DNA of 63,746 bases, filler included, from Octopus bimaculoides (GCF_001194135.2; 6 parts of 6 records of this genome joined end to end with filler, not necessarily neighbours in it), one strand, 5' to 3'; numbered from the whole stretch's first letter, positions 8,298 to 57,033 are shown. Numbers and translations are program-made. The notes: generated by a model not told the origin, from the letters alone.

Positions 8298-10403
8298 CGA
8301 ATATATAAATAAAATATATAAATTATAAAATACTAAATGAATAAAATGTAAAAGACTTTGTGCATTAGACAAAGATGGAATATTTATGGTCGAAATGTCT
8401 TCGAGTATAGGCATGCTCAATCAGGGATGAAGGAAATAAAAAATATTTTTAAAAATGAAGAGAAATGACCTTGAACACCGCCGTAGAAAGACCTGGAATA
8501 ATAGAAAAACACTCTTTGAGAGAGTTATAATGGTAAATGTAGACATCGGGCATGTGTGTGTGTGTGTGTGTGTGTGTATTTGACGGGATTCTTTCAGTTT
8601 GCGTCTATCAAATGCACTCGGAAGGCTTTGGTCGGCATAGGGCTATAAGAGAAGACATTTGGCCAATGTGCCACGCAGTGGGACTGAACCCGGGATCATG
8701 CGGTTGGGAAGTAAGCTTTTTACCGCACAGTCACGTGTGCACCTATTTTTATTTACCCATAAGTTAAGAAGAGCAAAAAAAAAAAAGAAAACTAAACTAA
8801 GGCACAATCACCGTGAATAATTGAGCGGTTGTACTTTCAAATATGATTGNNNNNNNNNNNNNNNNNNNNNNNNNNNNNNNNNNNNNNNNNNNNNNNNNNN
8901 NNNNNNNNNNNNNNNNNNNNNNNNNNNNNNNNNNNNNNNNNNNNNNNNNNNNNNNNNNNNNNNNNNNNNNNNNNNNNNNNNNNNNNNNNNNNNNNNNNNN
9001 NNNNNNNNNNNNNNNNNNNNNNNNNNNNNNNNNNNNNNNNNNNNNNNNNNNNNNNNNNNNNNNNNNNNNNNNNNNNNNNNNNNNNNNNNNNNNNNNNNNN
9101 NNNNNNNNNNNNNNNNNNNNNNNNNNNNNNNNNNNNNNNNNNNNNNNNNNNNNNNNNNNNNNNNNNNNNNNNNNNNNNNNNNNNNNNNNNNNNNNNNNNN
9201 NNNNNNNNNNNNNNNNNNNNNNNNNNNNNNNNNNNNNNNNNNNNNNNNNNNNNNNNNNNNNNNNNNNNNNNNNNNNNNNNNNNNNNNNNNNNNNNNNNNN
9301 NNNNNNNNNNNNNNNNNNNNNNNNNNNNNNNNNNNNNNNNNNNNNNNNNNNNNNNNNNNNNNNNNNNNNNNNNNNNNNNNNNNNNNNNNNNNNNNNNNNN
9401 NNNNNNNNNNNNNNNNNNNNNNNNNNNNNNNNNNNNNNNNNNNNNNNNNNNNNNNNNNNNNNNNNNNNNNNNNNNNNNNNNNNNNNNNNNNATATATTCA
9501 TACACACACATACACGCGGTGGGGGTGCTTTTTCTGATTCTTTGTTCTTTTCTCTCTCTTCCTCTTTCTCCACTTCTCTGCACTCTGCTCTGCATATCCG
9601 TCGAAGTGCTCTGCCCAAAGCGACATGTTTCTGCTCTGAACTTTTCTTGAAGCCGTGTCGGGACACCGGAGGTATATCATGCAACTTTATTCAGGTACAC
9701 ACGGCGATTAAATAAGAAGCAACACCGAAGAAAACCAACTGAAATCTGCTGAAGCGGTCTTCTGGGTCTTATCTGAATGGAAGTATAAGATACAAAGGCT
9801 GGCAGATGGTGAGGAGAGACATTCTAAAATAATTCACACAACTTAAGCGTTTTCCAGAACTCAAAAAGAGAAATTCTCGGATACTTCTCTCATGAGCGGA
9901 AATTTGTCTTCTCAACGAGATCGTGTCCATTCTTGGACCAGGGAATGACATACACAGCTTGCACGGTGTACCCACTGCTAAAACTAATCCAGGAGAAATA
10001 GCTTGACTTTTCTCCCGGAAAAAATGTTATATCTTCAGTTTCTTTCCATTTCCTTTTACTAACACCGAGCCAAGCATTTCCGACCACTTTGTCTAAAGAT
10101 TCTACAATAGGCGCAAAGGTCAACGTCAAATCGGTGTTGGCATTTTGAATAGTTATATGTCATAACTGACAATAGAACCCTAACTTAACTGCTTGTTACC
10201 ACTAAACTACATCTCACCTTACCTTTTCTATCTCGTTTGTGGGCAAGGACGTTAATGTGCGCTTTATAAACCGTGAAATACGGTAACACAGGAATATTTC
10301 TATCTCTTTGTCCTTGATTGATAGTCTGAACGCCTGCCTGCCTACCTTATAATTATTGTCTATCTGTCTACCTGCCTGATTCATCTGCTTCACCATTAAT
10401 AAG

Positions 10404-44870: not shown

Positions 44871-45063
44871 NNNNNNNNNNNNNNNNNNNNNNNNNNNNNN
44901 NNNNNNNNNNNNNNTTAATTAATTAANNNNNNNNNNNNNNNNNNNNNNNNNNNNNNNNNNNNNNNNNNNNATTATTTTTTATTTTCCTATTATTCCTTCA
45001 CGTGCGGTTAACACAACCCCACCATTTACTGACTTATATATATATATTTCAGTTAACAGACTG

Positions 45064-45101
<38 letters not shown>

Positions 45102-45617
45102 CAGTCTGTTAACTGAAGGAAATTTACGTAAATGTTTGCATTTCCAGTTATAGACTACATAAATCTTAAACGTACGTACTAAACGATTTCAAAATATCAC
45201 TTATTTGTTTTGGTTTAACTTCATTATTACAACTTATATAATGTGTGTGTATTTGTGTGTGTACGTGTGCGTGCGTGTGTGTGTGCGTGCGTGCGCGTGT
45301 GTGTGAGTGTGTCCTGAGTGTGAGTTTAAACTGCATCCAGTTTGGCAGATTCAGGGTCTTGAAGAGTGTGGAACAACCTCTCAGCCATTATTGTTCCCTA
45401 GGTCTATTCTGACCCGGAGTAGCAGCACCTGTTAGGGTCCCAGAGACAGCGTTTTTTGGACAGAATGACAGGATTGGGTGTCGTTCTTGATTTGATGCGG
45501 CTGACTGAATATTCAAACTGTTTCGGTGACTACATTTACGACGCAAGTGGCAAACTTACATACATACACACATATACACGCGCTCGAGTACGAAAACGGA
45601 GAAAAAGAAAGAGAGAA

Positions 45618-45650
<33 letters not shown>

Positions 45651-45664
45651 CAGANNNNNNNNNN

Positions 45665-45713
<49 letters not shown>

Positions 45714-46088
45714 ACGTTAAAGAAGATAAATATTGGTTTCAAATTTTGACACAAGGCCAGCAATCTTTAAGTGGCGGCGGTAAATTGATTATACTCATTC
45801 CTTATTTTATCGAACCCAAAAGGATCACGGCAAAGTTGACCGCAGAAGAATAGAAAGCATTTTCGTACTAATGACTCTGCCTGCTCAACGCCTTAAAACG
45901 AGAAAAATGTTAAAAAGTCTGATTTCAAATAAGTCTGCAACGAATCAGCGACGCCAAACAGCAGCTCCACAACGCCTCATACACAGTTTAGGAAGTCTAG
46001 TCAGAAGGTTTATGTTTCAATGTAGGACAGCTATAATATAACTATTAGTCTTGATTATATTTTCAATGACAGTTTCTTTTTGTTACAG

Positions 46089-46169
46089 TCACACTCGTAT
46101 TTTTTGTTTATGCCGAGTTTTTCTCAATTCATGTTCGTCTGAATACTTGTGAACGCAATTTCATCGTAG
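46089..46169 (+). CDS. Unrecognised gene 3, internal exon (beta-strand-rich)
   Basis: Acceptor TTTCTTTTTGTTACAG and donor G|GTGAGT; 81 bp, phase 1-1, open frame TLVFFVYAEFFSIHVRLNTCERNFIV. Length, phases and hydrophobic pattern match the minus-strand exon at 51111-51191. Confidence 0.55.
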
Positions 46170-46923
46170 GTGAGTTGAATTTTTTTTCTATTTTAATCAA
46201 TAATAATTCATAGGGTTCTATTTAATCTAATATCATTTTTTACTTATAAGCTATTAGTTGATCTGAGAATATAGTAGCACACATTTACTCAAGTTAGTCA
46301 GTTGGACCGAGCCCGGATCCATATGGCTGCAATGTGAACTTCTTAGCCACTTGCCAAATATAAATTTATCTATCTCTCTAGCTATGTTTGTCGCCACTTC
46401 AACATGAGTGTTTCGTACGAAACAAACGTTACTACGAAACCCCGAGGGAAAGCCTCCCCTAGGTGCTGCAATCTGCACCCAATATATATTGCTAGTAGGG
46501 GAGCGAACTCGTACCATATTCTAGCGACTTCACAGGACCAATAGGCCGTCCGGTTTCGGGCTATTTTTGCCCATTCTCGGTGCTGGACACCTGTCCGCTA
46601 GAGATAGCTGTAGTTTACTCCAGCTTGCAATATATAGAAAACCAAGCGACAATCAGTCACTGATCTTGCAACAAGCAAAGTAGCTAGTTAGAAAATCTCC
46701 ATAAGAGATGAAAGTTGTGACTATACTGGGAAGTAATGTTTATTGCCATTTTAACATGGGTGTTCCGTACGAACCGACGTTACTACTACTTTGAATCCCT
46801 AGAGGAAGCCTCCTTTAACTGGTTATCGATGTACTTTGCACCCGATATATACTGTAAACAGTATAGAGACGGTCTTACTATCTATCTATGTATTTTACTA
46901 TGTACCGACATTTATATATGTAA

Positions 46924-47560
46924 TCTGATCAATAAGTATCCGGAATGTTCCCATAGTGACGAAGCTAAAGCACGCGGAATAACGCCGCTCGACAAAGATT
47001 GACTATGAACTCTGCTGTGCATGCGCACTAAGTTTTGGCGTTCTAGCTTACTTCCACTGTTTTCAGCAGTGCTTGGAAGGAACGAGTGTTGCGTGTAATC
47101 GTCGCATTGACCACAAAAGAGACAGTCGAGCAGAGAATCTGCATCAAATTTTGCCAAATGCTCGGCGATTCTTGCTCAGAGGCCTATGCAAAGTTTTCAA
47201 AAAATTTTCATCGTTCTCGACACGATCAAGGAGATCTTGAGCAACTGAAACCCGGGTGTCTTTTTGGTCAGCTGGAAGCAGTTTTGGGACAAACTTGGCA
47301 GACACACACCTCATACTCAAATCTTCAGTGATAATGGACAGAGCTGTAACTAATCTGCACATCCTCTGACAACTCATGGATGGTGATTCGACGATTTCCC
47401 CTCACAGCGGCACACACATCTGTGGAAGTGAGCTAGAACGTTAAAACTTAGTGCACATAGATAGCAAAGTTCATAGTCAATCTGTGCCAAGTAGCTTCAC
47501 TCTGCGTTCTTTAGCTTCGTTATAATAGCAACAGTCCGGATACTTATTGATCGGACCTCG
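46924..47560. mobile_element. Mariner-derived MITE with long inverted arms and an inverted internal transposase segment
   Basis: Arms of about 135 bp at 46924-47057 and 47422-47560 are reverse complements. Forward EQRICIKFCQMLGDS at about 47110-47200; reverse RRITIHELSED...MRCVSAKFVPKLL...DENFLK at about 47200-47420. Confidence 0.9.
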
Positions 47561-48106
47561 CATAGTGAATCCCCTGCACAACAGTGTCTTGAGTCTTGAG
47601 AATCGCATGTACGAGGACCTAGTTTCCATGGTGTACAAATGAAATGACAGAGATCACAGAGGTCCCCTTGAATGGAGTTTCCTGTCCATCGCAGGCATAG
47701 TCATTTACAGCCGAATGGACTGAGCCATGAAGTGTTTTGCTCAAGAACAGAACGCACCGCCCGCTCCAGGAATCGTAACCATATACCTTCATATATCTAT
47801 GTATATATGTGTGTATGTATGTATACATATTTATATACATACATACATACATACATACATATATTGACACACAAAATTAAAAACGAATGCACGTGGAAGT
47901 GAATTATATAAAAATCCTCACCGACTAATTAGCAAAGGAAAGTAAAAAGGAGCGTGACAGTATATAAGCAAAAATATTCAGAAACATATCAAACCATGAT
48001 TAGTGAGATGCACATGTGAAGATACTCATAAATACAACATACGACATACATGGAACATGTAGTAATCTTTTGATCACTTTCTTTTTTTCTTTCTTTTTTT
48101 TTGCAG

Positions 48107-48318
48107 AAAACAACCAAGAAGGGCATTTTAATATTACGTTATATTCAATCAGCGCAATGTTTTTTGATGTCCGTCACGTTGAAGCATCCCGATATCATTC
48201 AAAATTTTGTCTCTATCAAGATAAGAAGCGGGGTTTCTTCAGCATCAGTCTGGGATGCTTTGAGAAATGGTGGCCGCAACAAACGAAGTTTTTAGTAAAA
48301 GAGGACGTAAAACGATGA
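48107..48318 (+). CDS. Unrecognised gene 3, terminal exon
   Basis: Very strong acceptor (about 30-nt pyrimidine tract ending TTGCAG). In phase 1 it continues the 46169 exon: (E)NNQEGHFNITLYSISAMFFDVRHVEASRYHSKFCLYQDKKRGFFSISLGCFEKWWPQQTKFLVKEDVKR then stop. Confidence 0.5.
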
Positions 48319-48981
48319 TTAATGAAACTAAAACATAGATGCTACTCTAGTGCCAAATTGATTTTTCTGTCTTTGTCTTTAATCTTCTACTTGTTTCGGT
48401 CATTGAACGGCCCCTGTGCTAGGGCACTACCGTGAAGGATTCTTCTTATCGAACAATTCGACTCAAGTACTTACTTTTATATATGGTACTTATTTTATCA
48501 GTCTTTTTTTTTTTTGCCGAAATGCTAAGTTACGGGAGTATTAACAAGCCAACGGGTCCCGCGCCGTATGACTGAACCTGAAATCATGCGATTGCAAAGC
48601 ATGAGCTTACCCATACAGCCATGCTTGCCTGTACGCGTGTGTGTGTGTATTCGCGCGTGAGTGCGTGTGCGTATGTGTGTGCATGTATGTGTGTGTGAAA
48701 ATGTGTTCCACATTTATACATATATTTTTATTCGAATAAAACAAATTTTCTTTCTTAACATAGTTTTTNNNNNNNNNNNNNNNNNNNNNNNNNNNNNNNN
48801 NNNNNNNNNNNNNNNNNNNNNNNNNNNNNNNNNNNNNNNNNNNNNNNNNNNNNNNNNNNNNNNNNNNNNNNNNNNNNNNNNNNNNNNNNNNNNNNNNNNN
48901 NNNNNNNNNNNNNNNNNNNNNNNNNNNNNNNNNNNNNNNNNNNNNNNNNNNNNNNNNNNNNNNNNNNNNNNNNNNNNNNNN

Positions 48982-49275
48982 GAGCGAAAACACCTAAAAG
49001 CTCCGCGAGGCTCCGGCAGGGGATGGTGGCGAACCCTGCTGTACTCTTTCACCACAACTTTCTCTCACTCTTACTTCCTGTTTCTGTTGTGCCTGTAATT
49101 CAAAGGGTCAGCCTTGTCACACTGTGTCACGCTGAATATCCCCGAGAACTACGTTAAGGGTACACGTGTCTGTGGAGTACTCAGCCACTTGCACATTAAT
49201 TTCACGAGCAGGCTGTTCCGTTGATCGGATCAAATGGAACCCTCGACGTTGTAAGCGACGGAGTGCCAACAACAA
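48982..49275 (+). mobile_element. SINE family C
   Basis: Nearly identical to the 33317 copy; head lies in a gap. Confidence 0.9.
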
Positions 49276-50060
49276 CAAATATATATATATGAAAGTAAAA
49301 ATACAAAATAGTTTTCACATAACAAATGTTTTCGTATAAAATATTTACTGAAAATGGTGTGTTTTCACAAAGGTGAGTTTTAAAACATATGTATGTATAT
49401 ATGAATGTAAGCAAAAAAAACATATGTATGTATATATGAATGTAAGCAAAAAAAACAAGCGTAGTATTCAAAGATTTATAGGATAAATACGCGGTTCAGG
49501 TAAATGCCGAAATAATTGCATAAGAAATAGAAACATTGTGCAATCATGCGTTTTTAACTCTTCAGTGTCCCGCCATTAATGCGACAATCTATGTAGAAGC
49601 TTGCCGTTATGCAAATGATAAAAACTCGCGGGTCACATAAATAACAGACGAAGCATCGCATCGAAGAACGTCACACCTCTTTCAAAGCATAAATGTGAGG
49701 GAGAAAGAGAGTTGCTGATGGGAAAAATTAAAAATAAAAGAACCGACAGCAGAAGGCCGGTAGGTCATAACTGAATTGGGGGCCCCCCTAACTGCTTTTA
49801 TAGCTTACCGATTTCCTTCTGCCAATTGTAATTATTTCTCCAATTTGCTGGAATGCGCGTATGTCCTATAAAGCTTCGAATACCAAACCTGTTTTCTTCC
49901 TTTTATTTCTTTGCCTTTTGTGGGGGGCTTATAATCTGCTCTCTACCGTTTCCCGAGTCTGATGCCACGGGTTTTTTTTTCTATAATGGATACCAGAGGG
50001 AATTGTAAAACTCACAACTATTCCCGATTTTGGTTCTGTGTCGGATTTTACTGTGCCTCC

Positions 50061-50147
50061 CTATTTTTGGTCCATATTAATGATATAAATACATGTGCTT
50101 TTATTACCACGAATATGAGAAGTGCTCTCAACGCAATATTCGATTTT
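50061..50147 (-). CDS. Unrecognised gene 4, candidate terminal exon
   Basis: Phase-0 frame KIEYCVESTSHIRGNKSTCIYIINMDQK then stop, loosely similar to VEASRYHSKFCLY in gene 3. The acceptor is the second AG after a pyrimidine tract, and the frame stays open after the stop, so the boundaries are uncertain. Confidence 0.3.
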   Translation of the reverse strand, partial: KIEYCVESTSHIRGNKSTCIYIINMDQK

Positions 50148-50384
50148 CTAACACAACATCTACGTTAATTTGGACATAAAGAGAAAGACTTAACATATAA
50201 TAACGTTTTATTCATAAAAATATTTATAACAATGTATGTTTATTGTTTATATTAACATATATTAACATATATTAAAAGGTATCTGTATTAACGTGCATGC
50301 ATTTATGTTAATATCATTTTGTGTTATTAGCATACGTTTCTGCCAGCTCACCGCTTTCAGTATTAATGATAATAATAATAATAA

Positions 50385-50600
50385 TCTTTTCTACTAAAGG
50401 CACAAGGCCTGAAATCTGATGGAGAGGACTAGTCGATTACATCGACCCAAGTATGCAACTGGTACTTAATTTATTGACCCCGGAAAGGATGAAAGGCAAA
50501 GTGGACCTCGGTGGAATTTGAACTCAGAACGTAGCAACAGACGAAATACCACTAAGCACTTCATCCAGCGTGCTAACGATTCTGCCAGCTCGCCGCCTAA
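50385..50600 (-). mobile_element. SINE family B
   Basis: Reverse-complement copy with an AAT-type tail. Confidence 0.85.
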
Positions 50601-50787
50601 CAATAGTAGTAGTAGTAGTAGTAGTAGTTCATCATCATCATCATCATCATCACCGACAGCGTCATCATCGTCTTGGAGGCTTATGGTCACGATTGTGAAA
50701 ACAACCAACCTGTCTCACATACGTTTTTTCATTTATGTTCGTTGTAACCATAACGCACCACTGCCTATAATGTATTTTAAACCTTAC

Positions 50788-50858
50788 GGCAAAGAAACAG
50801 ACACTTAATATCGGCAGACGTTTAACCTTCACTTTCAAAAACAACATTTTTCGATTCC
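50788..50858 (-). CDS. Unrecognised gene 4, internal exon
   Basis: Acceptor CTCCTTATTTTTCAG. The phase-1 frame is the only open one: (W)NRKMLFLKVKVKRLPILSVCFFA; donor GTAAGG. Confidence 0.5.
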
Positions 50859-50911
50859 CTGAAAAATAAGGAGAAAAAAGGGAAAAATTAAATTCATGAA
50901 ATACAAAATTT

Positions 50912-51072
50912 CAGGAGTGGCTGTATGGTAAGTAGCTTTCTTACCAGTCGCATGGTTCCGGGTTCATTCCCATTGCGTGGCACTTTGGGCAAGTGTCTTC
51001 TACTATAGCCTCGGGCCGACCAAAGCCTTGTGAGTGGATTTGGTAGACGGAAACTGAAAGAAGCCTGTCGTA
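50912..51072 (+). mobile_element. SINE family A, 5' half
   Basis: Head to GAAGCCTGTCG; lies between the gene 4 exons at 50858 and 51111. Confidence 0.85.
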
Positions 51073-51110
51073 TATATGTATACAGAAATAACAAACAACT
51101 TACTACTTAC

Positions 51111-51191
51111 ACAGTTTTATCTTTTGTTGTTTCCCATTCACTGTCATTAACAGTTGAAAATATCCTTTTCCGATATGTATATCGAAAGTAA
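51111..51191 (-). CDS. Unrecognised gene 4, internal exon
   Basis: Acceptor CTTTATTTTTCAG and donor GTAAGT; 81 bp, phase 1-1; reads (F)TFDIHIGKGYFQLLMTVNGKQQKIKL. Confidence 0.65.
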
Positions 51192-52772
51192 CTGAAAAAT
51201 AAAGATCACGAAATTAACTGTATGAGCAGCAACAGTCTGCAAATTGCCGTTACAAATAATATTTAAAAAGTGACACTGGAGAGACGGCAAAGGAGAATAT
51301 AGAAAAAGAAACAGAAAACACTCACACACACACACACACACACACACATACTAGACGCAGACTGGCGCAACCCTTCATCAGTTGTCGACCAAAAATCATC
51401 ACAATTTCGACACCGTCCGAATCTTTTGTGAAGGTGATGGTGGGAAGCTTAGGAAAAAAAGGTTAGGAAAAAAAAAGAAAAGACATGTGAGGGAACTGTT
51501 CTGAATACATTCATATAAGTGTGTTAGTGTGTATGTATTTGTGTATATATGTGCGTGTATGTATGTAAACACGTCAATTCTTCGTGTCTTACCGTGGATT
51601 GTAAAAAGGATGAACAGCTTTTAATGATTTTCGGTTTTTATTGGGCTCTTGTCAAAGGTATCTACATCGCTTGACCAATCCCCAAGCAAAAAGAACCAGG
51701 TATTCTTTTATATACACATCATTAGGCGCAGGCGTGGCTGTGTAGTAAGCAGCTTGCTTCCCAACCATATGGTTCTAGGTTCAGTCCCATTGCATGACAC
51801 GATATGACAGGGTTTCTTCAACCACCTCCACCACCATCACAACCACTAACACCTAGGAGTAAATGGACACGATCTGTCTTTTCGACTATAGCCTCGGGCC
51901 GACCAAAATCTTGTAGGTGGGTTTAGTAGACGGAAACTGAAAGAAGCCCGTCGTATATATATGAATATATANNNNNNNNNNNNNNNNNNNNNNNNNNNNN
52001 NNNNNNNNNNNNNNNNNNNNNNNNNNNNNNNNNNNNNNNNNNNNNNNNNNNNNNNNNNNNNNNNNNNNNNNNNNNNNNNNNNNNNNNNNNNNNNNNNNNN
52101 NNNNNNNNNNNNNNNNNNNNNNNNNNNNNNNNNNNNNNNNNNNNNNNNNNNNNNNNNNNNNNNNNNNNNNNNNNNNNNNNNNNNNNNNNNNNNNNNNNNN
52201 NNNNNNNNNNNNNNNNNNNNNNNNGAATTTAAGGATTGGAGAAAACGCATGTTATAATTGCATACTTTATTCCTACATATGTTTCAAAGGATAACAACTT
52301 GTGTGATCCATAGGGATCTTTGATATTAAAATTGTAACCTTCTCAAGAGGGAAAGCATGGGAATCATCTTAAACGTAAGACATTATGTATTTATTTTCTC
52401 CTAGTTAATAATTAACTCGGACAAAATAAATTGGTTAATAGATACCATGGTAGCAAAGACTGTGGTGTAACTCCTGTTTATAAGGTAGAAACTCCTTGTT
52501 ATTTTGGGTACTTGAGTAAATATACAAATTTAGTAAATGGAGTAAAACGCATATGTTAAATGAATTCTTTTATTTCCAAGAAATTCATTTTCTAAGTTCT
52601 TCATTATTTTCGAAATTAATTGAGACAAAGGTAGCGGATTTCGTTAATAATATGGGAGCAAAAAAAGGGTATAGCTCAATGATGGCAGCTATTCGCATAC
52701 GATACAAAAATTATATGGGGTGGGGGTAATCTCAAGAGAAATTGGCCCCTACATATGGAAAAAGTAACTTAC

Positions 52773-53030
52773 AGTATATGCCCACAGTTCTTATGCCAGT
52801 CACTTGGTAACAAGTATAATGGTTTCCGGTCCCATTGCAGGACATAGATCTTACATTCTCCAATATTTCAGCCTTTGGTATATTATTTATCATTCTAATT
52901 TCATCTAAGCTTTGATCCATTGTTATAATCGATCTATCAACTTCAGCGCCATTCATTAGCTTGTCCTCCTGAATTGGTCGGGTGATCGAAGAAGCGTTAC
53001 CATTCGTCTTCTGCATAGGAATGGAAGCAT
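52773..53030 (-). CDS. Unrecognised gene 4, internal exon (putative pro-region and start of Cys-containing domain)
   Basis: Acceptor TATTTTTCCTAG and donor GTAAGT; 258 bp, phase 1-1; reads (D)ASIPMQKTNGNASS...EILENVRSMSCNGTGNHYTCYQVTGIRTVGIY. Confidence 0.65.
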
Positions 53031-53302
53031 CTAGGAAAAATATAAAAGATGTCAAATTTAGATTTAGATTTTTTATGATTAAAGAATGAGGTTTAAAAAA
53101 ATGGAAGACGTCTACTGAATTTCTTTTTTTCTTTGTGGGCATGTTGTTTAATTGAAGGGAATATATTTAATGTTAGAGACTAATTAATTATAGAGCATTT
53201 AGTTTATTGCAGATATCTATTTCTGCTAATTATTCTGTCGAAAGTAACACCAATTATACATAAATACATATAATATCTCTCGCTTTCACACACCCTCTGT
53301 CT

Positions 53303-53353
<51 letters not shown>

Positions 53354-53583
53354 GCACATATACATGCGCGCTCACACACGCATGTCCAAGTATATAGGCA
53401 TTTACATACAACTAGATACACGCGCATACGCACACGTATGGACGCTTATATACATACATATGTACAGGAACTCGTATATGCAGTTACGCACGTGTATATA
53501 TACATAAAAATACGTACATGGCATAGATAAATATGTGCATAGGTACGTACATAAAGCAAGACACTCAAGTCCGTACGAAGCTT

Positions 53584-53627
<44 letters not shown>

Positions 53628-53715
53628 TTAATACATCTATTTCTGTTAATTATTCTGTCGAAAGTAACACCAATTATACATAAATACATATAATATCTCT
53701 CGTACCTGAATTGAT

Positions 53716-53757
53716 GTACCTGGAGAGACTCAGAACGGGTCGAAACATGTGTTGTAC
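53716..53757 (+). ncRNA. Decayed hammerhead motif
   Basis: CTGGAGA (core mutated); helix II GACTC/GGGTC; GAAA; ACATGT palindrome; helix I GTAC/GTAC. Confidence 0.35.
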
Positions 53758-54759
53758 CCAATAGAGGCTGTTACACATTCCATCTCCTAGTTTATTAATA
53801 TTGTTATATATATATATATATATATAGTTATTTAATATTTTTATATATATATATATATCACAATATTAATAAACTAGGAGATGGAATGTGTGTAATAGAC
53901 TTTATTNNNNNNNNNNNNNNNNNNNNNNNNNNNNNNNNNNNNNNNNNNNNNNNNNNNNNNNNNNNNNNNNNNNNNNNNNNNNNNNNNNNNNNNNNNNNNN
54001 NNNNNNNNNNNNNNNNNNNNNNNNNNNNNNNNNNNNNNNNNNNNNNNNNNNNNNNNNNNNNNNNNNNNNNNNNNNNNNNNNNNNNNNNNNNNNNNNNNNN
54101 NNNNNNNNNNNNNNNNNNNNNNNNNNNNNNNNNNNNNNNNNNNNNNNNNNNNNNNNNNNNNNNNNNNNNNNNNNNNNNNNNNNNNNNNNNNNNNNNNNNN
54201 NNNNNNNNNNNNNNNNNNNNNNNNNNNNNNNNNNNNNNNNNNNNNNNNNNNNNNNNNNNNNNNNNNNNNNNNNNNNNNNNNNNNNNNNNNNNNNNNNNNN
54301 NNNNNNNNNNNNNNNNNNNNNNNNNNNNNNNNNNNNNNNNNNNNNNNNNNNNNNNNNNNNNNNNNNNNNNNNNNNNNNNNNNNNNNNNNNNNNNNNNNNN
54401 NNNNNNNNNNNNNNNNNNNNNNNNNNNNNNNNNNNNNNNNNNNNNNNNNNNNNNNNNNNNNNNNNNNNNNNNNNNNNNNNNNNNNNNNNNNNNNNNNNNN
54501 NNNNNNNNNNNNNNNNNNNNNNNNNNNNNNNNNNNNNNNNNNNNNNNNNNNNNNNNNNNNNNNNNNNNNNNNNNNNNNNNNNNNNNNNNNNNNNNNNNNN
54601 NNNNNNNNNNNNNNNNNNNNNNNNNNNNNNNNNNNNNNNNNNNNNNNNNNNNNNNNNNNNNNNNNNNNNNNNNNNNNNNNNNNNNNNNNNNNNNNNNNNN
54701 NNNNNNNNNNNNNNNNNNNNNNNNNNNNNNNNNNNNNNNNNNNNNNNNNNNNATATATA

Positions 54760-56210
54760 CACCTTGTCTGAAGATATTAGGCAAATCGCTTTGTTTTTTT
54801 AATAAAATGAATGTACATGTACATACGAACCTGAAATTTTAGGATGTTGGTACAAATGTTTTTTCTTAACTGTGGCTAAAATTTGACATGGATCTGATTT
54901 GATTTTCGTGAATAATTGAGAATTTACCAAATTGGCCGTCTGAAGCTATTATGCAAATGTTGGAATTGTTATTTGCTCTGCGTATCAGGACAATTAAAAT
55001 ATAAGAACCCATTTTGAACATTTTACTAATTCAAAGAACAATGTTTTAATATATAGTTGAAACAATTTACATATAACGACCTTTCTTTTCAATCATAACG
55101 ACCTTCCTTTTCAATCCACGTTACTAATCTCTTGTCCATCGAATTTGTTGGTTTTCCAATTTGATCTGGCGAAGCTGCAGCTGTAATACTTTGTATAGTA
55201 TCCCACAGTTCTACCTTACTGTTGTACTGTTTGCCTCCTTCATAGAGTTTCTGTTTGATGATTGACCTGGGGTTTTCTACTGAGTTCAAGTCAGGGCTCG
55301 ACGGTGACCGCTCCATCGTTTTGTCTTCAGTAAATCGTTCGCGCTCAAGAAACTCACAAGATAGGCGAGAAGCATGTGATGGAACATTATCATGCATAAA
55401 TATACACTTTATCTTGAAATTGTGAGGCTGACGTTTGTACCATTCAAAGAAAGTTTGATCCAAGAATTCACAATAATTAGTACCATTGCGTTTTACACCT
55501 TCGTCAACTTTAAACGGTCCAATGATGGTTCTATTAACAATACCAGCCAATATCATTACACCAGCACCTCCTTGTTGCCGTCGTCTCGTTATAGGAGCAT
55601 CTCTTGGTCTCACAGAACCCATCCTTTAACCCGTTCATCTGGACCATCTAATGTGACGCGCGATTCGTCAGTGAATATGACGTTTCTGAAACCTGTTTTT
55701 AAGTACTTTCTTGCCCACTTTAGACGTTTATCAATATTAGTTGGAGATATAGGAGGCTGGCGAGGAGATTTTTTCACAGAACCAATGTCACGAAGGACTC
55801 TACACCTCTTGTTTCTCTTTACTCCAACAATCCCAGCCATATCAAATACCTTATCACTACTGAGTAGTGGGTTTTTATCGGCAATGCGTTTCAACTGATG
55901 TTTATCTCTCTTGGACAAGTTCTTCAACCCCCTACCCAGACCTTGGTTTCCTGTTCTTTGTTATATCTTCAATTGTTTTCCTGATTGTTCGATTATATCG
56001 GCCAAGCTGTTCAAAGAGGTCATGCCATCACTTAAAAGCTTAGTCATTTCCTGCTTTTCAGACGCTCTAATATCTTTCTTTTTACCCTTGATTATATTAT
56101 GACCAGCAAAATAACAAAAACGTATTACTAACACTGTAAAAATATAAGTTCCAACATTTGCATAATAACTTCAGACAGCCAATTTCAGTAAATTCTCAAT
56201 TATTCACGAA
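54760..56210 (-). mobile_element. Tc1-superfamily DD37E (TRT-like) DNA transposon relic
   Basis: One end follows TA at 54760. Inverted repeats at 54905-54966 and 56148-56210, the latter cut by a SINE. The motif GTCTGAAGxTATTAxGCAAAT recurs at the outer end and in the inner repeats. Confidence 0.85.
55089..56089 (-). pseudogene. Frameshifted DD37E transposase
   Basis: GKKKDI...; NVIFTDESRVTLDGPD; RRRQQGGAGVM; FMHDNVPSHA...SPDLNSVEN, with 37 residues between the second D and the E (hand count). Confidence 0.9.
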
Positions 56211-56355
56211 TTCCGTGTTCAAATTCCGCCGCGGTCGACTTTGCCTTTTATCCATTCGGGGTTGATAAGATAAGTATCAGTTGAGTACTGGGGTCGACGT
56301 AATCGACTTATTTCCTCCCTTGAAATTGCTGGCCTTGTGCCAAAATTTGAAATCA
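56211..56355 (+). mobile_element. SINE family B interrupting the end of the DD37E element
   Basis: Core and tail match; starts where the inverted repeat stops. Confidence 0.8.
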
Positions 56356-57033
56356 ATATTTCGTTTTAATATTGCTGTTGAATGAGACATACGGCGAAAG
56401 ACATCTCAGTCTGCCTCTCCTCCTGTCCCTCGGGTCACAGTGTAGCAAGGATTATATTATCTCATGCATAGTTTCATTTTTACAACAGCATGGTATGGTT
56501 TGCGAGGAGCTAAGACGCATTGGTCAAGGACAGAATGTCAGAAACAAGAAATACGAAAACGTCGTATTGTTCGAATTGTCGACTGACTAAACAAAAAGAT
56601 AAGCGGATTTCGTTTTAAGTCTTTATACGATAATATCATGAGATATAAATATTGATTAGTTCGATTGTTATAACCAATTGAATTTTACTTCTTTTATATA
56701 TTGATATATTTTATATGTTGACATATTTTATATATTGACATAGGTGCAGTCGTGGCTGTGTGGTACAAAGATTGCTTCCCAGCCAGATGGTTCCGTGTTC
56801 AGTCTCATTGTGTGGCATCTCGGGCAAGTGTCTTCTATTATAGTTTCGGGGCCAATCAAAGCCTTATCAGTGGATTTAGAAAACGGAAAGTGAAAGAAGC
56901 CCGTCGTGTGTGTATATATATATATATATATATNNNNNNNNNNNNNNNNNNNNNNNNNNNNNNNNNNNNNNNNNNNNTTAATTAATTAANNNNNNNNNNN
57001 NNNNNNNNNNNNNNNNNNNNNNNNNNNNNNNNN

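What the first reader, a model, noticed from the sequence alone, without database searches (positions are those of the whole stretch)
46089..53030. Convergent pair of unrecognised, probably paralogous beta-rich genes
Seen: independent exon chains on opposite strands, each with canonical splice sites and compatible phases. Each has an 81-bp phase 1-1 exon (TLVFFVYAEFFSIHVRLNTCERNFIV versus TFDIHIGKGYFQLLMTVNGKQQKIKL) that aligns without gaps in hydrophobic pattern and a shared Asn. Downstream segments are loosely similar (VEASRYHSKFCLY versus VESTSHIRGNKSTCIY). These exons are largely invisible in the ORF track and I do not recognise the family. Inference: a fast-evolving, lineage-restricted family with an all-beta fold, created by inverted duplication. 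The C-terminal C-x15-LGCF-type ending of gene 3 faintly recalls DUF4773 proteins, which is only a hypothesis.
Basis: partly seen in the sequence, partly recalled or inferred. Interest (0 to 1): 0.7.

Follow-up and report, generated by a model that had tools for sequence, protein, structure and literature searches.

The report
Octopus-only secreted beta-protein gene pair
The two tail-to-tail exon chains are real, already annotated but uncharacterised Octopus bimaculoides genes that are probably distant paralogues in a small family of secreted, cysteine-braced, beta-rich proteins found so far only in octopods; the function is unknown, so this is an orphan gene family and not a new kind of system.

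Summary
The observation largely holds. The piece is Octopus bimaculoides chromosome CM046613.1. Gene A (+) is LOC106876292 and gene B (-) is LOC106876296, both "uncharacterized protein". B's proposed last exon (50147 downward) is wrong: the real last exon reads through the 50788 donor to a stop at 50665.

The two gaps named in the finding are harmless; one is intergenic and one is intronic. Two other gaps each hide an exon: B's signal-peptide exon and A's exon 2.

Paralogy is probable. Sequence signal is weak (P about 2e-4 to 1e-2). However, gapless O. vulgaris and O. sinensis orthologues show the same layout in A and B: signal peptide, C-x8-C-x12, a phase-1 intron, an 81-bp exon, another phase-1 intron, then C-x14-17-G-C.

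A search of 1.84 billion representative proteins found relatives only in Octopus and Argonauta. DUF4773 is not supported. A moderate-confidence AlphaFold model shows nine beta strands with no Foldseek match. Both genes diverge fast (dN/dS 0.47 for B, 1.46 for A). Interest is modest.

The parts
45132..45171 (+). Gene A (LOC106876292): alternative first coding exon of isoform X2 (MFAFPVIDYINLK + 1 nt, GTACGT donor). It has no signal peptide and is probably a minor or spurious 5' end.
   Evidence: P0003 sequence read. It lies in a block 93% identical to O. vulgaris.
46089..46169 (+). Gene A: the 81-bp phase 1-1 exon (V)TLVFFVYAEFFSIHVRLNTCERNFIV. It is exon 3 of the full 4-exon gene. Exon 1 (signal peptide) lies beyond the piece. 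Exon 2 lies in the 2783-N gap just left of 44971.
   Evidence: AG acceptor and GTGAGT donor read.
48107..48318 (+). Gene A: terminal coding exon (ENNQEGHF...FCLYQDKKRGFFSISLGCFEKWWPQQTKFLVKEDVKR, TGA at 48316-48318). It holds conserved Cys3 and the G-Cys4-F motif.
52773..53030 (-). Gene B (LOC106876296): exon 2, phase 1-1, 258 bp. It encodes a polar pro-region followed by the hallmark CNGTGNHYTCYQVTGIRTVGIY.
   Evidence: Splice sites read. The RefSeq model starts at the internal Met (53015) because exon 1 is unsequenced.
51111..51191 (-). Gene B: the 81-bp phase 1-1 exon (F)TFDIHIGKGYFQLLMTVNGKQQKIKL.
   Evidence: The same exon size occurs in O. vulgaris B and paralogue C; it is 84 bp in Argonauta.
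50665..50858 (-). Gene B: true terminal coding exon (WNRKMLFLKVKVKRLPILSVCFFAVRFKIHYRQWCVMVTTNINEKTYVRQVGCFHNRDHKPPRR, TGA at 50665-50667).
   Evidence: The conserved Cys3 and G-Cys4 lie downstream of 50788.
53907..54752 (.). Assembly gap that by synteny contains gene B's exon 1 (signal peptide; MSRFSSLCIVLVAFYVVAATSEIDNDELRN in O. vulgaris).
   Evidence: The flanks align to L001 11303 and 9517, which bracket O. vulgaris exon 1 at 10001-10091.
50060..50147 (-).
   Evidence: It is absent from all annotated models. The frame is broken by a 4-nt indel and a stop in O. vulgaris.
48769..48981 (.). Assembly gap in the intergenic spacer between the two 3' ends. It does not affect either reading frame.
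   Evidence: The stops are at 48318 and 50665.
51972..52224 (.). Assembly gap inside B's intron 2. No exon is hidden there.
   Evidence: The O. vulgaris gapless orthologue has no exon between 16846 and 19667, and the protein is continuous.

Best explanation
Two real protein-coding genes sit tail to tail, with their stop codons 2.3 kb apart. They are LOC106876292 (A, + strand) and LOC106876296 (B, - strand) of Octopus bimaculoides.

They are distant paralogues in a small, octopod-restricted gene family. In O. vulgaris a third member (C) lies about 75 kb away on the same chromosome.

Each gene encodes, in order:
- a cleavable signal peptide;
- a variable polar linker or pro-region;
- a roughly 110-residue all-beta domain with four conserved cysteines, arranged as Cys1-x8-Cys2 near its start and Cys3-x14-17-Gly-Cys4 at its end.

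All introns are phase 1. One always falls 12 residues after Cys2 and is followed by a 27-codon exon.

Shown here: the genes and their exons, the family, its restriction to octopods, the shared layout, and the rapid divergence.

Inferred: the proteins are secreted, N-glycosylated and braced by two hairpin disulfides. They act outside the cell as small binding proteins (carrier or ligand type). The interaction evolves quickly, with gene A possibly under positive selection.
For: Gene identity:
- The chains match RefSeq proteins at 93-100%.
- The piece is identical to GCA_001194135.2 CM046613.1.

Family:
- A profile search of 1.84e9 representatives returns only O. bimaculoides B, the O. sinensis/O. 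vulgaris paralogue C (E 3e-28) and an Argonauta hians protein (E 7e-19).

Shared architecture:
- Exon sizes are 91/261/81/194 (B), 91/258/81/173 (C), 169/84/182 (Argonauta) and 151/168/81/212 (A). All introns are phase 1.
- All four have Cys-x8-Cys-x12 before the intron.

A-to-B sequence signal:
- The B-family HMM hits A collinearly over about 115 residues and aligns all four Cys. P is 2e-4 to 1e-3. Shuffles reaching the observed score were 0/2000, 30/2000 and 28/5000.
- hhalign gives P = 0.01 over 101 columns.

Secretion:
- N-terminal hydrophobic leaders are present in O. vulgaris B, in C, in the Argonauta protein and in A isoform X1.
- Many N-x-S/T sites are visible in the sequences.

Fold:
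- AlphaFold on the domain gives pLDDT 76.5, pTM 0.65 and nine beta strands.

Evolutionary rate:
- dN/dS is 0.47 for B and 1.46 for A.
- Exon mismatch is 13.8% and 11.3%, against 8-9% in flanking aligned non-coding DNA. There are no frameshifts.
- A's non-synonymous rate exceeds the non-coding rate (P = 0.009). Only 18% of neutral simulations keep A's frame open.
Against: - A-to-B sequence similarity alone is not significant at database scale. The B profile did not retrieve A at E <= 0.001, and BLASTP gives E 0.1-7.
- Gene A is known only from three closely related Octopus species. With dN/dS >= 1 it could be decaying rather than adapting.
- In O. bimaculoides itself, A's exon 2 and B's exon 1 are unsequenced. 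The full layout is inferred from orthologues.
- The AlphaFold result is shaky. The five models range from pLDDT 37 to 76, and the full-length model failed at pLDDT 36.
- No transcript, proteomic or functional data could be consulted. The binding function is inference only.
- BLAST-aligned non-coding DNA is biased towards conserved stretches. This inflates the apparent excess of exon divergence.
Confidence: 0.72

Rival explanations
1. Both are real genes but are unrelated to each other. The shared 81-bp phase 1-1 exon, the cysteine spacing and the adjacency are coincidence.
For: Pairwise BLASTP is not significant. hhalign probability is 4%. A was not retrieved by the B profile in the whole-library search.
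Against: Four independent features coincide: Cys-x8-Cys-x12 before the intron, a 27-codon exon, all introns phase 1, and Cys-x14-17-G-C-F at the C-terminus. The alignment is also collinear with P about 1e-3, and the two genes are physical neighbours.
Confidence: 0.15
2. Gene A is a decaying or non-functional duplicate (a transcribed pseudogene or young ORF). Only B-type genes encode functional proteins.
For: dN/dS is 1.46, not significantly different from 1. The exons are as diverged as introns or more so. No A-like sequence was found next to the Argonauta B homologue. O. vulgaris and O. bimaculoides carry several exon-skipping isoforms (P0003, P0004, P0011).
Against: The frame is open, with no indel, across 97 codons in three species. 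Neutral expectation is about 18% open from substitutions alone, and about 7 gap openings per kb occur in the flanks. All four family cysteines, the signal peptide and the blocks SRYHSKFC and LGCFEKWWP are conserved. The non-synonymous rate exceeds the local non-coding rate (P = 0.009), which points to positive selection rather than drift.
Confidence: 0.2
3. The family is a divergent branch of DUF4773 or of another known beta-barrel binder family such as the FABP/lipocalin-type calycins.
For: Foldseek's top 45 PDB hits are nearly all intracellular lipid-binding proteins (FABP/CRBP), with probability up to 0.89. DUF4773 proteins do exist in octopus (PMC11431876).
Against: No DUF4773 hit at E <= 10 for any of 7 members. 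The best Foldseek E-value is 0.048 with TM 0.33 and rmsd above 10 A, which is not the same fold by the usual criteria. No PDB sequence hit was found.
Confidence: 0.07

Closest known systems
RefSeq/UniProt gene models LOC106876292 (XP_014780273/4, A0A0L8GK62) and LOC106876296 (XP_014780278, A0A0L8GLC2) of Octopus bimaculoides. Orthologues are LOC115218537 and LOC115218674 in O. sinensis and CAI9731736-40 in O. vulgaris.
   Same: These are the same loci. The exons in the window reproduce the models exactly.
   Different: The databases call them 'uncharacterized' and do not link A to B. Both O. bimaculoides models are truncated by assembly gaps: B lacks its signal-peptide exon and A lacks its Cys-x8-Cys exon.
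Pfam DUF4773 (PF15998)
   Same: Small secreted invertebrate proteins with conserved cysteines.
   Different: No match to the Pfam model at E <= 10 in any family member.
Calycin-type up-and-down beta binders (FABP/CRBP, lipocalins)
   Same: The predicted domain is about 110 residues and forms an antiparallel beta meander of nine strands. Lipocalins are likewise secreted, disulfide-braced and fast-evolving. Foldseek ranks FABP/CRBP first.
   Different: TM-score is only 0.26-0.34 with rmsd 8-15 A. There is no helix-turn-helix lid and no sequence similarity. This is a resemblance in strand topology only, not a demonstrated shared fold.

Membership tests
Pfam DUF4773 (PF15998) | Match to the Pfam HMM at or above its gathering score | tested here: not met
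Intracellular lipid-binding protein / calycin fold | Structural superposition on a solved member (TM-score > 0.5, significant Foldseek E-value) | tested here: not met
   Best hit was hFABP1 6do6 with E 0.048, TM 0.33 and rmsd 10 A. The model is only of moderate confidence.
Octopod B-type family (defined here from P0001, P0002, P0005/9, P0006): is gene A a member? | N-terminal signal peptide | tested here: met
   A isoform X1 exon 1 encodes MNFKIVFLYFLVPLFSGIFVSC (L002 21370 downward, outside the piece). This was judged by eye; no SignalP run was possible.
Octopod B-type family: is gene A a member? | Cys-x8-Cys followed 12 residues later by a phase-1 intron | tested here: met
   Met in the O. 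vulgaris and O. sinensis orthologues of A: LPCKTEGFINTCLFPVTSGKKDYN, then the intron. In O. bimaculoides the exon falls in an assembly gap and cannot be read.
Octopod B-type family: is gene A a member? | 27-codon (81-bp) phase 1-1 exon with the invariant Asn | tested here: met
   Window 46089-46169. MAFFT and HMMER align it without gaps to B's 51191-51111. The Asn is invariant.
Octopod B-type family: is gene A a member? | C-terminal Cys-x14-17-Gly-Cys-(Phe/His) | tested here: met
   A has FCLYQDKKRGFFSISLGCF. B has WCVMVTTNINEKTYVRQVGCF. C has FCADVTTTVRGELAVRKLGCF.
Octopod B-type family: is gene A a member? | Statistically significant profile match | tested here: inconclusive
   For a single targeted comparison, HMM P is 2e-4 to 1e-3, empirical P is <5e-4 to 0.015, and hhalign P is 0.01. 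The match is not significant at whole-database scale.

The most novel reading that the evidence does not exclude
The family is a new, octopod-specific all-beta fold with no structural relative in the PDB. Its members are secreted signalling or carrier proteins, for example ligands or carriers in chemotactile sensing, reproduction, venom or mucus. Gene A would be under recurrent positive selection after an ancient inverted duplication.
Probability: 0.15. Interest if true: 0.55.

Novelty: new member of a known kind. Interest (0 to 1): 0.3.

Why it matters
Cephalopod genomes contain many lineage-restricted genes with no known function. This report links three 'uncharacterized' loci into one family. 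The family has a clear signature: a signal peptide, four cysteines, all phase-1 introns and an 81-bp exon. That signature gives annotators a way to repair two gap-truncated O. bimaculoides models.

It also gives experimenters a small, secreted, fast-evolving target to look for in octopus secretions. If the fold and the positive selection hold up, the family would be a modest example of new-gene evolution in octopods. As it stands, this is an ordinary orphan gene family.

Tried and rejected
- DUF4773 and every other Pfam family: no hit.
- PDB by sequence: nothing.
- Full-length AlphaFold of B: pLDDT 36, unusable.
- Foldseek of the domain model against PDB and BFVD: no hit with E <= 0.001, and TM about 0.3.
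  - O. vulgaris does have an annotated alternative isoform (P0012) that splices out of the last exon.
  - It uses a different donor (after ILH) and a different tiny exon 3.3 kb downstream.
- DNA-level inverted repeat between the two genes: none.
- Transposon origin of the exons: each exon has only its single syntenic match in 38 kb of O. vulgaris, whereas SINE and TE pieces hit many places.
- A-like exons near the Argonauta homologue or near paralogue C: none.
- Literature and one octopus skin-mucus proteome supplement, searched for all accessions: nothing.
- tRNA scan for SINE heads: none.
Full report
**What the piece is.** Bases 44971-56933 are identical, in reverse orientation, to L002 6084-18046. 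L002 is Octopus bimaculoides assembly GCA_001194135.2, chromosome CM046613.1, and it has the same N runs. A 2783-N gap lies immediately to the left of the piece.

**Checking the exon chains (gene A).** A word-indexed search of 5.8 billion proteins returned RefSeq proteins for both chains.
- Gene A (+) is LOC106876292.
- Isoform X2 (110 aa, P0003) matches at 100%. Isoform X1 (148 aa, P0014) was also retrieved.
- A's 81-bp exon (46089-46169) and terminal exon (48107-48318) are exactly those of the annotation.
- X2 adds a short first exon at 45132-45171.

**Checking the exon chains (gene B).**
- Gene B (-) is LOC106876296 (172 aa, P0001).
- B's exons 53030-52773 and 51191-51111, and the acceptor at 50858, are also exact.
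- The annotated last exon does not splice at 50788. It runs on to a TGA at 50665-50667 and encodes ...CFFAVRFKIHYRQWCVMVTTNINEKTYVRQVGCFHNRDHKPPRR.
- The O. vulgaris and O. sinensis orthologues do the same (P0002, P0013).
- That exon is rejected, and so is the similarity block built on it.

**The assembly gaps.**
- Gap 48769-48981 lies between the two stop codons, so it is intergenic.
- Gap 51972-52224 lies in B's intron 2. The gapless O. vulgaris locus (L001) has no exon in the corresponding interval, and the protein is continuous across the junction.
- Two other gaps hide exons.
  - O. vulgaris B begins with a 91-nt exon encoding MSRFSSLCIVLVAFYVVAATSEIDNDELRN. The blocks flanking window gap 53907-54752 align to L001 11303 and 9517, which bracket that exon at 10001-10091.
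  - B's signal-peptide exon therefore sits in that gap. The RefSeq model starts at an internal Met for that reason.
  - O. vulgaris and O. sinensis gene A (P0015, 203 aa; P0010) have a 168-nt exon 2 that the O. bimaculoides model lacks. By synteny it falls about 450-620 nt left of the piece start, inside the 2783-N gap.

**The family.**
- A HMMER profile of B was run against 1.84 billion representative proteins. It found only O. bimaculoides B, a paralogue in O. sinensis and O. vulgaris (LOC115218436, P0005/P0009, E 3e-28) and one Argonauta hians protein (P0006, E 7e-19).
- In O. vulgaris the paralogue (here called C) lies about 75 kb from B and A on the same chromosome.
- No family member matches any Pfam family, including DUF4773, at E <= 10.
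- No family member matches any PDB sequence.

**Are A and B paralogues? The sequence evidence is weak.**
- BLASTP gives E 0.1-7.
- hhalign gives P 0.01-0.03.
- A four-sequence B HMM scores the A proteins at P 2e-4 to 1e-3.
- Shuffled controls reached the observed score in 0/2000, 30/2000 and 28/5000 trials.

**Are A and B paralogues? The alignments and gene structure are much stronger.**
- The alignments are collinear over 100-120 residues and place all four cysteines together.
- Exact threading gives these exon sizes:
  - B: 91/261/81/194
  - C: 91/258/81/173
  - Argonauta: 169/84/182
  - A: 151/168/81/212
- Every intron is phase 1.
- In all four genes the exon before the 81-bp exon ends with Cys-x8-Cys-x12. 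B has CNGTGNHYTC-YQVTGIRTVGIY and A has CKTEGFINTC-LFPVTSGKKDYN.
- All four proteins end with Cys-x14-17-Gly-Cys-Phe/His.
- With physical adjacency added, I rate paralogy at about 0.8.
- The tail-to-tail arrangement fits an old inverted duplication, but no nucleotide-level inverted repeat remains.

**What the proteins look like.**
- All full-length members start with a typical hydrophobic leader. This was read by eye; no signal-peptide predictor was available.
- They carry several N-x-S/T sites.
- B and C have a polar stretch of about 65 residues between the leader and the domain. The Argonauta protein lacks it.
- AlphaFold on full-length B failed (pLDDT 36).
- On the 114-residue domain, with six aligned A, B and C sequences, the best model reached pLDDT 76.5 and pTM 0.65. 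It shows nine antiparallel strands and no helix. The other four models were worse, at 37-64.
- Foldseek found no significant match in the PDB. The best hits were FABP/CRBP with E 0.05, TM 0.33 and rmsd above 10 A. It found none in BFVD.
- 'All-beta' is therefore supported at moderate confidence. No known fold can be assigned.

**Rate of evolution (O. bimaculoides against O. vulgaris).**
- B has dN/dS 0.47 overall and 0.37 in the domain.
- A has dN/dS 1.46, from 34 non-synonymous and 6 synonymous differences in 97 codons.
- Exon columns differ at 13.8% (A) and 11.3% (B). Flanking BLAST-aligned non-coding DNA differs at 9.0% and 7.8% (Fisher P 0.014 and 0.019).
- Coding columns contain no frame-shifting gaps. 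About 2.5% of non-coding columns are gaps.
- A's non-synonymous rate exceeds the local non-coding rate (P 0.009).
- Only 18% of neutral substitution simulations keep A's frame open.
- This fits a rapidly evolving coding gene, possibly under positive selection. A recently relaxed gene is not excluded.
- Aligned non-coding DNA is biased towards conserved stretches, which inflates the contrast.

**Mechanism.**
- Shown: the genes, the exons, the family, the layout and the rates.
- Inferred: the products enter the secretory pathway, are glycosylated and are braced by two local disulfides (Cys1-Cys2 and Cys3-Cys4, each spanning a hairpin). They act extracellularly as small binding proteins whose partners change quickly.
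- I put about 0.7 on 'secreted disulfide-braced beta-domain family'.
- I put only about 0.25 on a carrier or ligand role of the lipocalin/FABP type.
- No expression, proteomic or literature data could be found for any accession.

**Verdict.** The genes are already annotated, and the family is one of many octopod orphan families. The new information is:
- the A-B-C family link and its signature;
- the correction of B's 3' end;
- the recognition that both O. bimaculoides models are truncated by gaps.

Noticed in passing
window 46924-47555 (intron of gene A): A foldback element with 134-nt inverted arms (81% complementary) separated by 364 nt. Short ORFs resembling the N-terminus of a mariner transposase gave no Pfam hit. 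It is present at the orthologous position in O. vulgaris, so the insertion predates the species split.
   Followed up: partly
window 54929-56185: Remnant of a Tc1-like DNA transposon with 46-nt terminal inverted repeats. It has broken transposase ORFs on the minus strand (HTH_Tnp_Tc3_2 E 3.7e-6 and DDE_3 E 2e-4, both below Pfam cut-offs). One ORF is called as a 177-aa 'gene' in the public annotation. An orthologous copy (88% identical) lies just upstream of B's exon 1 in O. vulgaris.
   Followed up: partly
window 50903-51077, 51720-51960, 56738-56913: Three copies of an abundant octopus SINE-like repeat (61-88% identity to each other), with many further copies in the O. vulgaris locus. The first copy sits in B's intron 3. 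ARAGORN finds no tRNA-like head.
   Followed up: partly
window 53215-53282 and 53635-53702; 53773-53891: A 68-nt direct repeat at 99% identity flanks a TA/CA microsatellite block. Next to it, and ending at the gap edge, is a near-perfect 50-nt palindrome. This could be a local duplication or an assembly artefact beside the gap that hides B's exon 1.
   Followed up: no
L001 24383-24440 and 27791-27814 (O. vulgaris): O. vulgaris annotates a B isoform (P0012, 170 aa) that splices out of the last exon after ...PILH to a 7-codon exon 3.3 kb downstream. This removes Cys3 and Cys4. It is unclear whether the isoform is real or an annotation artefact.
   Followed up: partly
L001 11676-16258 (O. vulgaris intron 1 of B) versus window 53365-53413: O. 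vulgaris carries about 4.6 kb of extra sequence in B's intron 1 relative to O. bimaculoides. The gene spans 17.8 kb there, as annotated with the alternative 3' exon. In O. bimaculoides exons 2-4 span only 2.4 kb, and exon 1 lies about 1 kb further upstream in a gap.
   Followed up: no
window 45066-45238: This block is 93% identical to O. vulgaris and contains the start codon and donor of A's isoform X2. It is flanked by a TA-rich palindrome (45034-45131). Its conservation is not clearly above the local background, so the X2 first exon is not independently supported.
   Followed up: no
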